The position numbers were made by a program, and so were the translations under genes. A stretch of DNA of 63,764 nt, counting the filler, from Octopus bimaculoides (lineage: Eukaryota), in NCBI RefSeq assembly GCF_001194135.2. It is 6 parts of 6 records of this genome, joined end to end, with 100 filler letters (N's around TTAATTAATTAA, not from the genome) between each part and the next. Parts side by side here need not be neighbours in the genome. Positions count along the whole stretch, not along the records: positions 55,542 to 62,033 come from NC_068993.1; 5 more parts are not named here. One strand, 5' to 3'. The stretch's first letter is position 1, and each line of letters begins with the position of its first letter. Below, piece by piece: positions 50,638 to 62,329 of the stretch. The notes under the pieces are model-generated. The model was not told the origin of the DNA and ran no database searches. It saw nothing but the letters and a program-made list of their open reading frames with translations.

Positions 50638-50997
50638 GCGGCTGTGTGGTAAGAAGTTTCCCGACGACCAAATGGTTCCAGGTTCAGTCCCACTGCGCGG
50701 CACTTGGGCAAGTGTCTTCTATAATAGTCTTGGGCTGACCGAAGCTTTGTGAGTGGATTTGGTAGACGGAAACTGAAAGAAGCCCGTCATATATGTATAC
50801 ATTTTTGTGCTTGTGTCTGTCTCCCCCACCGTCGCTTGGCAACCGATGTTGGTGTGATCACGTCCCCGTAACTTAGCGGTTTAGCAAGAGACCGATAGAA
50901 TAAGTACCAGACTTACAAAAAATAACTCCTGGGGTCGATTTTTTCGACTAAAAGGCGGTGCTCCAGTATGGTCGCAGTCAAATGAGTGAAACGTAAG
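50638..50997 (+). mobile_element. SINE family A, full length (adjacent degenerate minus copy at 50535-50637)
   Basis: Head ggctgtgtggtaag...ggttcagtccca, CORE-like block, and tail cgactaaaaggcggtgctccagtatggtcgcagtcaaatgagtgaaac. Confidence 0.9.
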
Positions 50998-55399: not shown

Positions 55400-55864
55400 G
55401 TTCAGTCCCACTGCGTGGCACCTTGGGCATGTGTGTTCTACNNNNNNNNNNNNNNNNNNNNNNNNNNNNNNNNNNNNNNNNNNNNTTAATTAATTAANNN
55501 NNNNNNNNNNNNNNNNNNNNNNNNNNNNNNNNNNNNNNNNNTTTTCCCCCATAAATATATTTAATTTATATAAGGGCATTACTATACAATATTGCCTCGC
55601 GCTAAACAATCGGATAAACAATCGTCTATGTACTATGCTCCTCGGGTTATGTTGATTTTTTATTTTTATGTGTCTTTACCATACGTGTACTGATGAATAA
55701 AAGATGCAGATTACTGCATTGATTATGAGATCATTGGTTTACCGTTAAGTTAAATGTTTTTAGGAGGTTAGCTTTGAAAGTTGCATTCCTTCGCGATCGG
55801 TACAAATGTGCTTATGGTAGTTTTGACTTTTGGAGTCCCTCTTAGCGTGAGGCATTATTGTACA

Positions 55865-56020
55865 GTAATGCCTTTCGGCAACATATGTTTCATAGCGAGT
55901 GGAACCTCAGAAGTGGTAAATATCCAAGCAAAGTGTATATCGCAGACTGCGATACAGAGAAGATTAACATGGTCCCTGCGCAATGATGACACGTGAATTC
56001 GTGAAGCGTTGCATATTTTT
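55865..56020 (+). pseudogene. U6: U6 snRNA retrocopy with internal insertion
   Basis: 55950-56020 matches U6 nt about 37-107 at 65/71 versus the remembered human sequence; ACAGAGA box intact, AGC triad changed to AAC, ends in TTTTT. A weaker 5' match (ttcggca..acatat) lies at 55865-55886. Confidence 0.9.
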
Positions 56021-56075
56021 CTAAAGGCGGCGTTCCAGCATGGCCGCAGTTAAATGACTGAAACAAGTAAAAGAA
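56021..56075 (+). mobile_element. SINE family A 3' tail abutting the U6 T-run
   Basis: ctaaaggcggcgttccagcatggccgcagttaaatgactgaaacaagtaaaaga matches 50948-50997. Confidence 0.88.
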
Positions 56076-56204
56076 CAAAAGAATATATATAGCTATATAT
56101 ATAGCTAAATCTGCAAGTTTTTTTTAATTCTCTCTGTTTATTTCCTTATAATCCCTTCTGTTGAAGAGCGTAGGCTCGAAACGTAAAAGACTTTCTCACT
56201 TTCC

Positions 56205-56690
56205 CGTCTGGGTCAGATGCTTCTTTTGGCTGTCTCGACACGTATACTCGGCCGGTGGTCGGAAATAAGGTTAAGGATGACTCGTCCGAGAAAATAACAT
56301 TCTTCCATTGCTCTAGGGACCAATTCTATAGGTTTTTACTTCACTCTAAACGCTTTGCAAAGTTTGTTTTTGAAAGTAGTTCTTTTCTGATTGCAGCCCT
56401 CCTATGAAATCCGGCTTTGTGAAGCTCCCGACGAACAGTTTTTGTGGGAACTGGGTTCTCGAGGTGGTAATTTTGGGAGCTGTACTTTTGTGATCCTTTC
56501 TAACAATTCGTGTAAGAGTCCGACAGTCCCTATCTGAAAGTTTTGATTTTCTTCCGGAGTTTTGTTTCGACGAGGAGGTTTTTCCCTCTTTCTCAAAGGC
56601 AGTCATTACTTTCGAGACAGTACTTTTTGATACACCAAACATTTCGACTGTTTTCGTTATACTAGCACCAAACGTAGCAGTTTTTTCTTA
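56205..56690 (-). mobile_element. Tc1-family transposase N-terminal fragment (HTH to first catalytic Asp)
   Basis: MFGVSKSTVSKV...SGRKSKLSDRD.RTL.RIVRKD, then WSLEQWKNVIFSDES (56278-56295), GRVYV; frameshifts present, no TIR seen. Confidence 0.88.
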
Positions 56691-57478
56691 TATCTTTGCA
56701 GATATATATATATATATATATATGTTTCTCCTTGTGTATTAACTTCGCCCAGTCCTGTTGGTTAATGAGTAAATTTGTAAATATACTTCATAGTTGCGCT
56801 TATCTGATTATATGCAATTACGTACGTACACGAGAGGTAAACTGTATGCATATGGTATACATTATATCAATGCGTGTTGGCGCGAACTAATGCGTGTATG
56901 AAAGTGAGTACATATGTATGCGCGTGCGTGCGCGTGAATGTGTGTGTGTGCGCGCGTGTGTGTCTGCGTGTGTGTGAGAAACAGTCTGGGTTTATGCTTG
57001 GATGTCTCTATTTACTTTATAACCGGTTTACACATCCTGTATCCATGTATACATATGTTAGTAATATTTATATTAAATTTTAAATGATTGAATTATTAAT
57101 ATAAACATAAAGATTGACGTATTTCCATATATGCGGCTCTTACTATGTTCATTCATCTGTCCATCTGTCTGTGCGTCTTCATCTATATAACGAATAATCG
57201 ATCGATCGATCTGCATATCCATCTGCCTATATCTCTTTACCTCTCTTTCTCTCTCCCCACCTTTCTCTCTCCCCCTCTATGTATGTATGTATGTATGCAT
57301 GCACGTATGTATGTATGTATGTATGTATGTATGTATGTATGTATGTATATTATTTTTCTTCCGCTTCAGTCTTGGAGTGCGGTCATGCTAGAGTACCACC
57401 TTGATATATGGATATATATATACAGAGATAGATATGAGGCAGACAAACAGACAGATGGACGGGTGGACGGATGGATGG

Positions 57479-57514
<36 letters not shown>

Positions 57515-57530
57515 ATGGATGGATGGATGG

Positions 57531-57684
57531 CACTAGCTTAGTTAGAGTGTGTGCGCCCAGGGCGGCCCTTCAGTTTACTGCTCCCGCACCCTGCCTACAG
57601 GGGACCCAAAAGTAGTGCCGCTCCCATAAAAGTGCGGCATGGGGCGGATCACCCCCTCTCTGTCTCCCTCTAGCTACGCTAGTG
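57531..57684. mobile_element. 154-bp MITE with 17-bp TIRs inserted in a (GGAT)n tract
   Basis: cactagcttagttagag ... ctctagctacgctagtg pair at 15/17; atggatgg flanks both sides; GC-rich interior. Confidence 0.75.
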
Positions 57685-58239
57685 ATGGATGGATAGATAG
57701 AAAGATAGATAGATAGATGAATGCTTAGGATGTATGTATGCATGGCTAAATGGATATTTATTTATATGTATACCATGTATATGTATATATATCTATCTAG
57801 ACACACACATACATTATGTGTGTGTGTTACGTAATCAACAGCACTCGTGAAATTTTGAAAAGTTACTGAGGCTAATGACAGACCTACCATAAATCTAAAT
57901 ATTCATATTTATACTCTTCTATATTTAGAAATATTCCCTCTTGTTAAATATATAAAAAGACGGGGAGAAAGCAGAAATATATTGAAATCCAGCTTCCCTT
58001 TTTCCCCCCTCGCTTCTTTATGTTTAAGGGATGTCTGTGGGTTGAAAAGACGTCATCCTTACATCATTCAGAAATGGGTCACGTAATGTAATAAACAGGG
58101 ACGTGAGTGAAATATTTGGTGAGTTTGAGTTGGGGTTACACAAATCTTCGTGGGAAAGTACTGTATATGTGTGTGTGTGTGTGTGTGTATGTGTGTCTAT
58201 ACGTATATGTCTACATACATGTATACGTAGATACACACA

Positions 58240-58274
<35 letters not shown>

Positions 58275-58340
58275 CCAGAATTGGCCCGAGTCATGTCTAA
58301 CTTAATAGCACCACCTGTAAATGTACATGCACGTGCAACA

Positions 58341-58381
<41 letters not shown>

Positions 58382-58395
58382 TCATGCATATATAG

Positions 58396-58728
58396 GCGTG
58401 GCCGTGTGGTAATAGGTTTGCCATGTGTTTCCAAGATCAGTCCCACTGTGCAAGACTCTGTAGATAAGTATCTTCTACTGTAGCCTGGGGCCAATCAAAG
58501 CTTTGTGAGTGGATTTGGTAGACGGAAACTGAAAAAGGTCCGTCGTGTGTGTGTGTGTGTGTGTGTGCTTGTTCCCCATCACAGGTTGTCAACCGGTGTT
58601 GGTGTGTTTACATCCCGGTAATTTAGTAGTGACTGAGAGAATAAGTACTAGACTTTAAAAAAGTACTGGGATAGACTCATTCCGCAAGGCAGTGCCCCAG
58701 TATGGCCGCAGTCTAATGATTGAAACAA
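58396..58728 (+). mobile_element. SINE family A, full length, diverged
   Basis: ggcgtggccgtgtggta head through gccccagtatggccgcagtctaatgattgaaacaag tail. Confidence 0.85.
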
Positions 58729-58778
58729 GGGAAATATATATGTAAATGCATACACACACATAAATATATGTATGTATA

Positions 58779-58811
<33 letters not shown>

Positions 58812-60774
58812 NNNNNNNNNNNNNNNNNNNNNNNNNNNNNNNNNNNNNNNNNNNNNNNNNNNNNNNNNNNNNNNNNNNNNNNNNNNNNNNNNNNNNNNNN
58901 NNNNNNNNNNNNNNNNNNNNNNNNNNNNNNNNNNNNNNNNNNNNNNNNNNNNNNNNNNNNNNNNNNNNNNNNNNNNNNNNNNNNNNNNNNNNNNNNNNNN
59001 NNNNNNNNNNNNNNNNNNNNNNNNNNNNNNNNNNNNNNNNNNNNNNNNNNNNNNNNNNNNNNNNNNNNNNNNNNNNNNNNNNNNNNNNNNNNNNNNNNNN
59101 NNNNNNNNNNNNNNNNNNNNNNNNNNNNNNNNNNNNNNNNNNNNNNNNNNNNNNNNNNNNNNNNNNNNNNNNNNNNNNNNNNNNNNNNNNNNNNNNNNNN
59201 NNNNNNNNNNNNNNNNNNNNNNNNNNNNNNNNNNNNNNNNNNNNNNNNNNNNNNNNNNNNNNNNNNNNNNNNNNNNNNNNNNNNNNNNNNNNNNNNNNNN
59301 NNNNNNNNNNNNNNNNNNNNNNNNNNNNNNNNNNNNNNNNNNNNNNNNNNNNNNNNNNNNNNNNNNNNNATATATATATATGCATAAATACATACATATA
59401 TGTATATACTTACATATATGTATATCTATATGCATATATGGGTAAACAACATGACATATGAAAACAACATGAAATACGAACGCAAACTTAGGTATGCGAA
59501 CAACGAGAGAAATAAATAGAAAACAAGACAAGTAACATAAAGAACGACCCTTCATCAGTTGTCGGCTGTTAATCTACTCCGCATTTCGAGCAATTAACGA
59601 CAATATGAGGCTTCGAAAAAACAGTTGTTCCGGCGAACTAAAATAGAATTTGGGATTTGCGGAGGGTCAAAGTTGGTAACAAAAACAGGACAGTGGAGAC
59701 ATACAACAAGCCAAACGAAAAGAAAAATGGAGGGCCGTTAGGCGAGACGAGGTAAGGTAGCGAACGCTGGGGGAATATATTTTGACAAGAGAAAAGATAG
59801 GAGAGGGGACAGACTGAAGGAAAAGAAAGATGGACGATGGTCACGTGTGAGTAACGAGAGAGAGTAAAGGAGGAAGAGGGAGAGAGAGAAAGAAAGAGAG
59901 AGACAGATAGAAAACGGTGAAGGGGAGAAAAAAGAATTAGAGAAAGGATGAGAGAGAAAAAAACGAAAGCGAGAGAAGGGGAGAAAAAAGAATTAGAGAA
60001 AGGAAGAGAGAGAAAACGAATAAGTATAATAATTCAAAATATATTGGACTAAAAATTATATATTTACTTCTTTAGCTAATATCAATAAAAGATTGATGTC
60101 TGGTATCAGTTAAAGGAATATTTAAGTTATGGAACATTCAAATTTTACACTAATCCTTCTATATATAAACTGAGAGAGTATATTATAGGTTTAAGAAGTT
60201 ATTACTGTTACTCCTTACATAATATTTATATTTTTTGGTGGTACTTGTTTAGAAGGGTTATTTATATAAAGGCCCTTATAAAATACTAAGATCAGGAGGG
60301 CAGAGCCATTTAAGAAAGAGATAAATCAAGTAATCTCAAAAGATCATTTCAAACAGTTTTGTCTTTGTTCAATCAGTCTATGAAATAAAACTGACCCATA
60401 AAAACAAATAAAATCAGTGACAGGCAGAGTCTTCATGACAATTTATTTATTAACTTCTCTGTTGTAGTAGAGACAACATGTTCTTTGTCTATCTCCTTAA
60501 CTTCTTGGAGATTTTAGGTATTATTATTCTCTCGTGTCCATCTGTTCTAATTTAATTAAATTCTATGTCTTTGTGCAGCTGAGGATTGCTCTGCATTTTA
60601 AATTGATGTAATGATTACATTGTTCAATTAAATGGAGTTGCATGAAACGATCGTACTGCATTACCTTTAGATATCCTTGTTGCTTATTTTGATTTTAATC
60701 ACCTTACTTTGAAATTGCATGGATAATACCGTACTAAATTCTGATTCCTCATCTTAAGTACCATATTCACCTGA

Positions 60775-60806
<32 letters not shown>

Positions 60807-60816
60807 GTCTGTCTGC

Positions 60817-60853
<37 letters not shown>

Positions 60854-61199
60854 CATATATATATATATATATATATATANNNNNNNNNNNNNNNNNNNNN
60901 NNNNNNNNNNNNNNNNNNNNNNNNNNNNNNNNNNNNNNNNNNNNNNNNNNNNNNNNNNNNNNNNNNNNNNNNNNNNNNNNNNNNNNNNNNNNNNNNNNNN
61001 NNNNNNNNNNNNNNNNNNNNNNNNNNNNNNNNNNNNNNNNNNNNNNNNNNNNNNNNNNNNNNNNNNNNNNNNNNNNNNNNNNNNNNNNNNNNNNNNNNNN
61101 NNNNNNNNNNNNNNNNNNNNNNNNNNNNNNNNNNNNNNNNNNNNNNNNNNNNNNNNNNNNNNNNNNNNNNNNNNNNNNNNNNNNNNNNNNNNNNNNNNN

Positions 61200-61258
<59 letters not shown>

Positions 61259-61761
61259 AATATATTTTTATACATATGTAAATACATATATATGAGTGTA
61301 TAAATATGTTTATTCATACATGTATATGAATATACATATATATATGCGCACACGTATTTTATTACTTAAAGCCATGTCTATTTTCAACTGTCTGTTCGTT
61401 TTTGTTCATTACAATTCATCGTATTAGCGTTCTAAATATTAATTCCTTTCGTGGTTACCGAACCATCAGCTAATCAGGAGAAAATATGTTGTCAAATGTA
61501 CAAGATATGATTTTGGTAGTATTGTTATAACGCTCAATCCAGCTAGCTGATTTGAAGTTATTTTTATAATATAAATTTTGCATATGGGAGCCCCATGTAA
61601 TAATTTCTGTTCTTGTGCCCGAAAAGGGTCATAACAAATCCCTTAAAGTTATGATCTGCACTGATGTATTTTGGTTGTGGTGGTCGTCGTAGTAGTGGTG
61701 GTGGTGGTGGTGGTGGTTGTGGTGCTGATGATGATGGTGGTGGGGGTGATAGTGGTGTTGG

Positions 61762-61792
<31 letters not shown>

Positions 61793-62329
61793 GATGACAT
61801 GATGAAGACTACGAACTGACGATGACGCCAACGACGACACCAATGATGACGACTACGATGATGGTGATGATGGTGATGATGGTGATGATGATGATTACTA
61901 TTATGCAACAGCTTATAAAGAAGCAACTTTCCAATACTATTTGCAGTACCACCAATTTGACCATTTCTGCCAACACCACCACCACCATCAACCACCATCA
62001 CTACTACCACCACCACCACCACCACCACCACCANNNNNNNNNNNNNNNNNNNNNNNNNNNNNNNNNNNNNNNNNNNNTTAATTAATTAANNNNNNNNNNN
62101 NNNNNNNNNNNNNNNNNNNNNNNNNNNNNNNNNATATATATATATATATATATATATAAAAACAAATAGTAAATGAGTATATGCATATATACGTACAGGT
62201 ATGTGCATACCGACATCCACCTGTATGTATAGGTGCATATCTGGGTACAGGACATTGCAAACAAAACGTAGACGAGAAAACACACAGATTGGACCAACAG
62301 ATTGGACGATTTGACTGAGGACTGGTGAA

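What the first reader, a model, noticed from the sequence alone, without database searches (positions are those of the whole stretch)
55865..56075. U6 snRNA retrocopy fused directly to a SINE 3' tail (U6-retroelement chimera)
Seen: 71 nt of U6-like sequence ends in its TTTTT and is followed with no spacer by the last about 55 nt of SINE family A. The full-length SINE has gattttttcgactaaaagg at this point (50937-50955), so there is a T-run microhomology. Established: mammalian U6/L1 chimeric retrocopies have this architecture (U6 5', retroelement 3' end) and arise by RNA ligation or template switching. Inference: an analogous fusion route operates here with a SINE tail; I do not recall it being described for molluscs. 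The AGC triad is mutated, so this copy should not be a functional U6.
Basis: partly seen in the sequence, partly recalled or inferred. Interest (0 to 1): 0.75.

Follow-up and report, generated by a model that had tools for sequence, protein, structure and literature searches.

The report
Dead U6 copy joined to SINE tail
A broken, 5'-shortened copy of the U6 spliceosomal RNA sits directly against the last ~60 bases of an octopus-type SINE; it is most likely a by-product of LINE reverse transcription, a kind already described in platypus, lizard and opossum, so it is new mainly for its host.

Summary
Window 55950-56020 (+) is U6 nt 37-107, 65/71 identical to human U6. It scores 66.3 bits against Rfam U6 (E 1.6e-15). 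It ends in exactly five T, the length of the mature U6 3' end. With no spacer it runs into 56021-56082, the 3' tail of a SINE. That SINE has a full-length copy in the same piece (58396-58740) and copies in Octopus sinensis (~80% identity). A 2 x 12-nt terminal repeat follows (56083-56106).

The U6 part has no first 36 nt and its AGC triad reads AAC, so it is not a working gene.

The best reading is an RNA-level U6/SINE-tail chimeric retrocopy. It would arise by template switching or RNA ligation, followed by LINE-mediated insertion.

This is not proven.

Doucet et al. 2015 already report 5'-truncated U6 joined to short L2/Mon-1, AnolisSINE2 and RTESINE1 tails. I found no mollusc report. Verdict: new member of a known kind, modest interest.

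The parts
55950..56020 (+). U6 snRNA-derived segment, U6 nt 37-107. It is 5'-truncated. The ACAGAGA box is intact and the AGC triad is mutated to AAC. It ends in T5.
   Evidence: Rfam U6 66.3 bits, E 1.6e-15. 65/71 identical to human U6, ungapped. Substitution list.
56021..56082 (+). 5'-truncated 3' tail of an octopus-type SINE (CTAAAGGCGG...GAAACAAGTAAAAGAACAAAAGA). It includes a small GCGGC/GCCGC hairpin.
   Evidence: 80% identity to the tail of the in-piece full-length SINE (D17). 79-81% identity to O. sinensis copies in L001. Four-way alignment A1. The hairpin is predicted but not significant, z -0.7.
56083..56106 (+). Terminal tandem repeat (ATATATATAGCT) x 2. Probable 3' end of the retrocopy.
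   Evidence: Exact 12-nt tandem duplication (D2). The other SINE copies also run into TA-rich simple repeats at this point.
55876..55949 (.). 74 nt of unique 5' flank between the MITE-like element and the U6 start. Not U6, not SINE, not repeated in the DNA available.
   Evidence: No Rfam match at E<=1. No blastn match in the piece, L001 or L002. U6-5' resemblance at chance.
55572..55875 (.). MITE-like element with 34-nt terminal inverted repeats (context, not part of the chimera).
   Evidence: Inverted repeat I1: arms 55572-55605 and 55842-55875, 88% complementary.
56196..56690 (-). Tc1/mariner transposase remnant (context). N-terminal HTH part with frameshifts and stops, truncated after '...PKEASDPD'.
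   Evidence: Three-frame translation. 84% identity to P0001, E 3e-81. 75% identity to Octopus sinensis LOC118762572. Pfam HTH_Tnp_Tc3_2 on the hits.
58396..58740 (+). Full-length reference copy of the SINE family in the same piece, followed by a simple repeat and an assembly gap.
   Evidence: Sequence. Tail match D17. Body matches SINE copies in O. sinensis L001.

Best explanation
This is a dead chimeric retrocopy made at the RNA level.

Proposed steps (inferred):
1. The reverse transcriptase of the SINE's partner LINE started target-primed reverse transcription on the 3' tail of a SINE RNA. That LINE is probably of the 'stringent' type, which recognises a specific 3' tail and simple repeat.
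2. After copying about 85 nt (terminal repeat plus tail), the enzyme continued on a mature U6 snRNA. Either it switched template onto the U-run 3' end of U6, or U6 had already been ligated to a 5'-OH SINE fragment through its 2',3'-cyclic phosphate (RtcB-type ligation).
3. Reverse transcription stopped at U6 nt 37, and the cDNA was joined to the chromosome.

The product has no promoter, no U6 5' stem-loop and a mutated AGC triad, so it does nothing.

Shown: the two parts, their orientation, the zero-spacer joint at the native U6 3' end, and the non-functionality. Inferred: the single-event RNA-level origin and the enzyme responsible.
For: - The U6 part ends at the last position of the Rfam model, with exactly five T. 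The major mature form of U6 ends in a 5-U tract with a 2',3'-cyclic phosphate (PMC6789731). A DNA-level accident has no reason to fall there.
- The SINE tail follows with zero spacer, in the same orientation, and runs to its own terminal repeat.
- The U6 part is 5'-truncated and has no A-tail or other priming tail of its own. By itself it has no evident route into the genome. The SINE tail supplies that route.
- The same architecture is documented for LINE families other than L1 (PMC4476161). Examples are 5'-truncated U6 upstream of a short L2 sequence in platypus (TSDs there only 1-9 bp), and U6 chimeras with the SINEs Mon-1, AnolisSINE2 and RTESINE1.
- Rough chance estimate (inference). SINE copies occur about once per 5-6 kb in the octopus DNA available: piece plus L001. 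A same-strand SINE 5' end within +/-1 nt of a given site is therefore expected at about 3e-4.
- The divergence of the two parts is similar. The U6 part differs from human U6 at <=8.5% of positions. The tail differs at about 5% from the small four-copy consensus.
Against: - No TSD encloses the whole unit. The best flank match for the U6 start scores 6.0, where 55% of random flanks score as high.
- It is a single copy. Recurrence, the empty site and junction reads could not be tested.
- The SINE's own T-run lies 2-3 nt 5' of the breakpoint, so microhomology-guided switching does not explain the joint exactly.
- A T8 run at 56118-56125 could be read as a low-complexity TSD of a tail-only insertion.
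- The partner LINE was not identified.
Confidence: 0.65

Rival explanations
1. Two independent events. A U6 pseudogene or gene remnant was already present, and a heavily 5'-truncated SINE later inserted right at its T-run.
For: The candidate TSD TGCATATTTTT (56010-56020) versus TGCAAGTTTTT (56111-56121), or simply T5 versus the T8 run at 56118-56125, could enclose the tail alone. Doucet et al. judged one U6atac/Alu pair without a TSD to be two independent events.
Against: That TSD scores 6.0, which is the null median. It needs a coincidence of about 3e-4 per site (inference from the SINE density). It leaves unexplained how a 5'-truncated, tail-less U6 fragment reached this site. None of the three other SINE copies available is a tail-only fragment.
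Confidence: 0.13
2. DNA-level rearrangement. A U6 retrocopy and a longer SINE copy lay close together, and a microhomology-mediated deletion between the U6 3' end (GTTGCATATTTTT) and the similar internal SINE stretch (GGTTGATATTTTT) removed what lay between them.
For: There is about 13 nt of imperfect similarity between the U6 3' end and the SINE segment just 5' of the tail in an O. sinensis copy. As a result blastn extends the SINE alignment back to 56008.
Against: A deletion through the shared T-run should keep the SINE's GA/CGA before CTAAAGG, and it is missing. The in-piece SINE copy has no such T-run (CATTCCGCAAGG). This reading still requires a prior U6 retrocopy next to a same-strand SINE.
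Confidence: 0.08
3. One member of a propagating composite family, in which the U6 fragment plus SINE tail acts as a new 'snRNA-headed' SINE-like repeat, rather than a one-off.
For: SINEs with snRNA-derived (U1/U2) heads exist (PMC4494074; cited in PMC11838501). A recent Octopus vulgaris repeat annotation lists families classed SINE/U (19 recent insertions) and U-L1 (2) (PMC13282606).
Against: The U6 part lacks its first 36 nt, and no internal or upstream promoter is evident. No second copy occurs in the piece, in 20.8 kb of O. sinensis DNA or in L002. Copy number could not be measured in the genome.
Confidence: 0.07
4. Assembly artefact: the contig mis-joins a U6 read and a SINE read.
For: The piece has two N gaps and many simple repeats.
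Against: The joint lies 2.7 kb from the nearest gap, inside ordinary unique sequence. An artefact would not be expected to fall exactly at the U6 3' end.
Confidence: 0.03

Closest known systems
U6/L2, U6/Mon-1 (platypus), U6/AnolisSINE2 (lizard) and U6/RTESINE1 (opossum) chimeric retrocopies: 'Group IV' snRNA pseudogenes of Doucet et al. 2015 (PMC4476161)
   Same: Sense U6 ending at its native 3' end, joined directly to a short 5'-truncated tail of a LINE or of the SINE that this LINE mobilises. U6 is usually 5'-truncated. TSDs are very short or undetectable.
   Different: The host is a cephalopod mollusc, and the SINE family is different. Only one copy was seen here, and its TSD is unresolved.
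Mammalian U6/L1 chimeric pseudogenes (Buzdin 2002; Garcia-Perez 2007; Moldovan 2019, PMC6789731)
   Same: U6 at the 5' side and the retroelement 3' end at the 3' side. The joint lies at the U6 poly-T end. The proposed routes are template switching or RtcB ligation.
   Different: Those carry mostly full-length U6, a poly(A) tail and clear 7-20-bp TSDs, and they depend on L1's relaxed poly(A) recognition. Here U6 is truncated at nt 37, the tail is a specific SINE tail with a simple repeat, and no TSD is seen.
SINEU, SINEs with U1/U2 snRNA-derived heads (Kojima 2015, PMC4494074)
   Same: An snRNA-derived 5' part fused to a LINE-type 3' tail.
   Different: SINEU are multi-copy and transcribed from their heads. 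Here there is no evidence of amplification, and the U6 piece lacks a promoter.
Dada-U6 DNA transposons inserted in U6 genes (PMC8869645)
   Same: They leave U6 fragments adjoining a mobile element, and they are reported in Mollusca.
   Different: Dada-U6 inserts at CTTGCGCAG (U6 nt ~64-72). That site is uninterrupted here (55976-55990). The breaks are instead at nt 36/37 and after nt 107.

Membership tests
Functional U6 snRNA gene (Rfam RF00026) | Covariance-model score above the gathering threshold | tested here: met
   66.3 bits against 44, E 1.6e-15. The score comes from model positions ~36-105 only.
Functional U6 snRNA gene (Rfam RF00026) | Complete RNA with 5' stem-loop (nt 1-36) | tested here: not met
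   Homology starts at U6 nt 37. The upstream resemblance is at chance level and overlaps a MITE terminal repeat.
Functional U6 snRNA gene (Rfam RF00026) | Catalytic ACAGAGA box and AGC triad intact | tested here: not met
   ACAGAGA is intact, but AGC reads AAC (G54A at 55967).
U6/retroelement chimeric retrocopy (Group IV snRNA pseudogene) | The U6 part ends at the native mature 3' end (poly-T) | tested here: met
   It ends at the last model position with exactly T5. Mature U6 ends in 5 U (PMC6789731).
U6/retroelement chimeric retrocopy (Group IV snRNA pseudogene) | Directly joined, in the same orientation, to a 5'-truncated LINE or SINE 3' part that runs to the element's own 3' end | tested here: met
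   Zero spacer. The tail 56021-56082 aligns to three other SINE tails and is followed by a terminal repeat.
U6/retroelement chimeric retrocopy (Group IV snRNA pseudogene) | One TSD enclosing both parts | tested here: inconclusive
   All candidates are at chance: whole unit 6.0, tail only 6.0, alternative 7.0, null median 6. Short or absent TSDs are usual for the L2-type cases.
U6/retroelement chimeric retrocopy (Group IV snRNA pseudogene) | Empty orthologous or allelic site lacking both parts; recurrence with independent joints | not testable with these tools
No eukaryote genome collection is available. Exact-protein look-ups and contig scans were empty.
Octopus-type SINE family (tail shared with Octopus sinensis copies) | Sequence homology to the dispersed family | tested here: met
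   79-81% identity over 50-68 nt to copies in the piece and in O. sinensis CM016861.1.
Octopus-type SINE family (tail shared with Octopus sinensis copies) | SINE head and body present | tested here: not met
   Only the last ~60 nt plus the terminal repeat are present. Upstream of it is U6.
snRNA-headed SINE (SINEU-like) | Multi-copy family with a promoter-bearing head | not testable with these tools
   No second copy in about 47 kb of available DNA. Genome-wide copy number is unknown. The head is truncated.
Dada-U6 insertion | Element inserted at CTTGCGCAG within U6 | tested here: not met
   The target site is continuous at 55976-55990.

The most novel reading that the evidence does not exclude
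U6/SINE-tail chimeras are a recurrent class in cephalopod genomes. That would show that the capture of mature U6 by non-L1 ('stringent') LINE machinery extends from vertebrates to protostomes. It might also be the source of the 'SINE/U' repeats annotated in Octopus vulgaris. The mechanism would be template switching or RtcB-type ligation at the cyclic-phosphate end.
Probability: 0.25. Interest if true: 0.45.

Novelty: new member of a known kind. Interest (0 to 1): 0.3.

Why it matters
If the single-event origin is confirmed, this would be an invertebrate (mollusc) example of U6 capture by a LINE/SINE system. It would support the view that U6 chimera formation is a general property of non-LTR retrotransposition rather than a vertebrate or L1 peculiarity. 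Such chimeras can also serve as markers of which LINE/SINE pairs were active in octopus genomes, where retroelement activity is of current interest. The copy itself has no function.

Tried and rejected
There was therefore no depth, junction or allele test.
- Exact-protein look-ups: ORFs over the joint, the left flank, the Tc1 remnant and the longest ORF were not on record.
- Protein search: the antisense ORF across the joint was searched to fish out other chimeras. It found 8 word candidates and no hit.
- DNA pattern scans: the SINE tail gave 0 hits in metagenome contigs (two scans) and in viral contigs.
- U6 5' half at 55865-55912: rejected. The score is at chance, and 55842-55875 is a MITE terminal repeat.
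- Antisense U6-like string downstream (56124-56137): rejected as chance, 60 of 500 shuffles reach it.
- Empty site from the Tc1 element: the element is truncated near 56196 and does not span the chimera.
- Dada-U6: rejected because its target site is intact.
- Tail hairpin as an RT recognition signal: the fold is not better than shuffles.
- L002 (ENA contig with a related Tc1): it has no octopus SINE, so it comes from another organism and was of no use.
- Rfam on L001 and L002: nothing found.

Full report
WHAT IS THERE

The only strong RNA-family match in the piece (55542-62033) is U6 at 55920-56020 (+). It scores 66.3 bits against a gathering score of 44, with E 1.6e-15. The other Rfam rows are microRNA models lighting up on TG/TA microsatellites, all far below their gathering scores.

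The covariance-model alignment is real only from model position ~36 onward. A pairwise alignment to human U6 gives an ungapped 65/71 match of U6 nt 37-107 to window 55950-56020. The six differences are at nt 54, 60, 71, 81, 82 and 98. G54A destroys the AGC triad, while ACAGAGA is intact. The segment ends in exactly five T (56016-56020). That is the last position of the Rfam model and the length of the U-tract of the major mature U6 form (PMC6789731).

From 56021 the sequence CTAAAGGCGGCGTTCCAGCATGGCCGCAGTTAAATGACTGAAACAAGTAAAAGA... follows. It is 80% identical to the tail (58686-58734) of a full-length SINE at about 58396-58740 in the same piece (family D17). It is 79-81% identical to SINE tails in a 20.8-kb locus of Octopus sinensis chromosome CM016861.1 (L001). 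In the four-way alignment the SINE homology of the chimera begins at CTAAAGG. Upstream of that column the other copies carry SINE body, whereas the chimera carries U6. The tail runs into an exact 2 x 12-nt repeat (ATATATATAGCT, 56083-56106), as the other copies run into TA-rich simple repeats.

First, the start coordinate 55865 is not U6. Positions 55842-55875 form the right arm of a 34-nt, 88% inverted repeat whose left arm is 55572-55605. Together they bound a 304-bp MITE-like element. The U6-5'-like string TTCGGCA-ACATAT...TGGAAC at 55873-55905 is reached by 35 of 500 shuffles, and unrelated windows of the piece score as high. The U6 part is therefore 5'-truncated at nt 37.

Second, the T-run microhomology is only partly right. 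One O. sinensis SINE copy reads GGTTGATATTTTTGACCAAAGG at this point. This resembles the U6 end GTTGCATATTTTT enough for blastn to extend the SINE alignment back to 56008. But the GA/CGA between the SINE's T-run and (C)TAAAGG is absent from the chimera. The in-piece SINE copy has no T-run there.

Third, the proposed TSD does not stand. I tested gapped local alignments of the 25 nt before each candidate 5' boundary against 56066-56140. The scores were 6.0 for the U6 start, 6.0 for the tail start (TGCATATTTTT versus TGCAAGTTTTT) and 7.0 for an alternative (TAAATATCCAAG versus TAAATCTGCAAG). Random flanks have a median of 6 and a 95th percentile of 9.5. The TSD test therefore discriminates nothing, in either direction.

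CONTEXT

The piece is AT-rich (37% GC) and full of microsatellites, with two N gaps. A Tc1/mariner transposase remnant lies on the minus strand at about 56196-56690. Its best named relative is an Octopus sinensis protein at 75% identity; unnamed ENA proteins reach 84%. Together with the SINE copies in O. sinensis, this places the window in an octopus-like cephalopod genome (inference). The Tc1 remnant ends before the chimera, so it gives no empty-site comparison.

HOW IT MOST LIKELY AROSE

The best-supported reading is an RNA-level chimera that was reverse-transcribed and inserted in one event by the LINE that mobilises this SINE. The reasons are these.
- The U6 part stops at the mature RNA 3' end, and the SINE part starts with no spacer in the same orientation.
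- The U6 part is 5'-truncated and has no priming tail of its own.
- The retained SINE segment is just the 3' tail plus its terminal repeat. This is the portion a tail-specific LINE reverse transcriptase would need (inference; the predicted GCGGC/GCCGC hairpin is not statistically supported).
- This exact architecture is documented elsewhere. In platypus almost all U6-L2 chimeras have a 5'-truncated U6 upstream of a short L2 sequence, with TSDs of only 1-9 bp, and U6 chimeras also form with the SINE Mon-1. Anolis has six U6-AnolisSINE2 chimeras. Opossum has a 5'-truncated U6 joined to RTESINE1 without an obvious TSD (PMC4476161).
- With about one SINE copy per 5-6 kb in the DNA available, an independent same-strand SINE 5' end within one base of the U6 end is expected at roughly 3e-4 (inference).

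The sequence cannot tell whether the joint was made by template switching during reverse transcription or by RtcB-type ligation of the U6 cyclic-phosphate end to a 5'-OH SINE fragment (PMC6789731). The offset of the SINE T-run from the joint speaks mildly against a microhomology-guided switch.

RIVALS

- Two independent insertions. This remains possible because a T8 run after the terminal repeat could be a low-complexity TSD. It needs an unlikely coincidence, and it leaves the tail-less U6 fragment unexplained.
- A DNA-level deletion through the shared T-rich stretch. This predicts a GA/CGA that is missing.
- An amplified composite family. This cannot be excluded without the genome. An O. vulgaris repeat annotation does list SINE/U and U-L1 classes (PMC13282606), but the truncated U6 piece has no evident promoter.
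- A Dada-U6 transposon. This is excluded because its target CTTGCGCAG is intact.

WHAT COULD NOT BE DONE

No cephalopod genome collection is offered. Look-ups by exact ORF, a protein search with the antisense ORF across the joint and DNA pattern scans all came back empty. The genome-wide count of U6-tail joints, the orthologous empty site and junction RNA reads therefore remain the decisive tests.

VERDICT

The thing is a non-functional U6(37-107)/SINE-tail chimeric retrocopy with probability about 0.65. It is a new member of a known kind: known in vertebrates for non-L1 LINE/SINE systems, with no mollusc report found in the searched literature. Interest is modest.

Noticed in passing
window 55572-55875: A 304-bp MITE-like element bounded by 34-nt terminal inverted repeats (88% complementary). 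Each arm is itself partly palindromic (GGCATTA...TAATGCC). No family or TSD was assigned.
   Followed up: partly
window 56196-56690 (-): A Tc1/mariner transposase remnant (HTH domains) with frameshifts and stops, truncated after the '...PKEASDPD' motif. Closest named relative is an Octopus sinensis protein (75%). Many relatives of about 75% identity lie on long ENA contigs from a different, SINE-free organism (L002).
   Followed up: partly
window 58396-58740 (+): A full-length copy of the SINE family, with an internal (TG)n stretch and a simple-repeat tail that runs into an assembly gap. Its 3' flank and TSD cannot be read.
   Followed up: partly
window 58812-59369 and 60880-61199: Two N gaps (558 and 320 nt), both flanked by (TA)n. 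The long 'inverted repeats' and long ORFs reported across them are artefacts of N runs and TA repeats.
   Followed up: yes
window 56900-58400, 58730-58810, 59370-59445, 61200-61360: About 55 sub-threshold Rfam microRNA/snoRNA matches (mir-297, mir-466, mir-5014 and others). All lie on TG/TA/TATG microsatellites and far below gathering scores, so they are not genes.
   Followed up: yes
window 61660-62033: A long imperfect triplet repeat (GGT/GAT/GTT)n. It gives open frames rich in H, P, T or V on both strands and runs to the edge of the piece. Coding or not is unknown.
   Followed up: no
window 59895-60006: A 56-nt tandem duplication (79% identity) inside a purine-rich (GA) tract.
   Followed up: no
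L001 9470-9490 (-), Octopus sinensis: The internal stretch GGTTGATATTTTT of this SINE copy resembles the U6 3' end (GTTCCATATTTTT). The similarity could favour U6/SINE template switching, or it could confuse alignments.
   Followed up: partly
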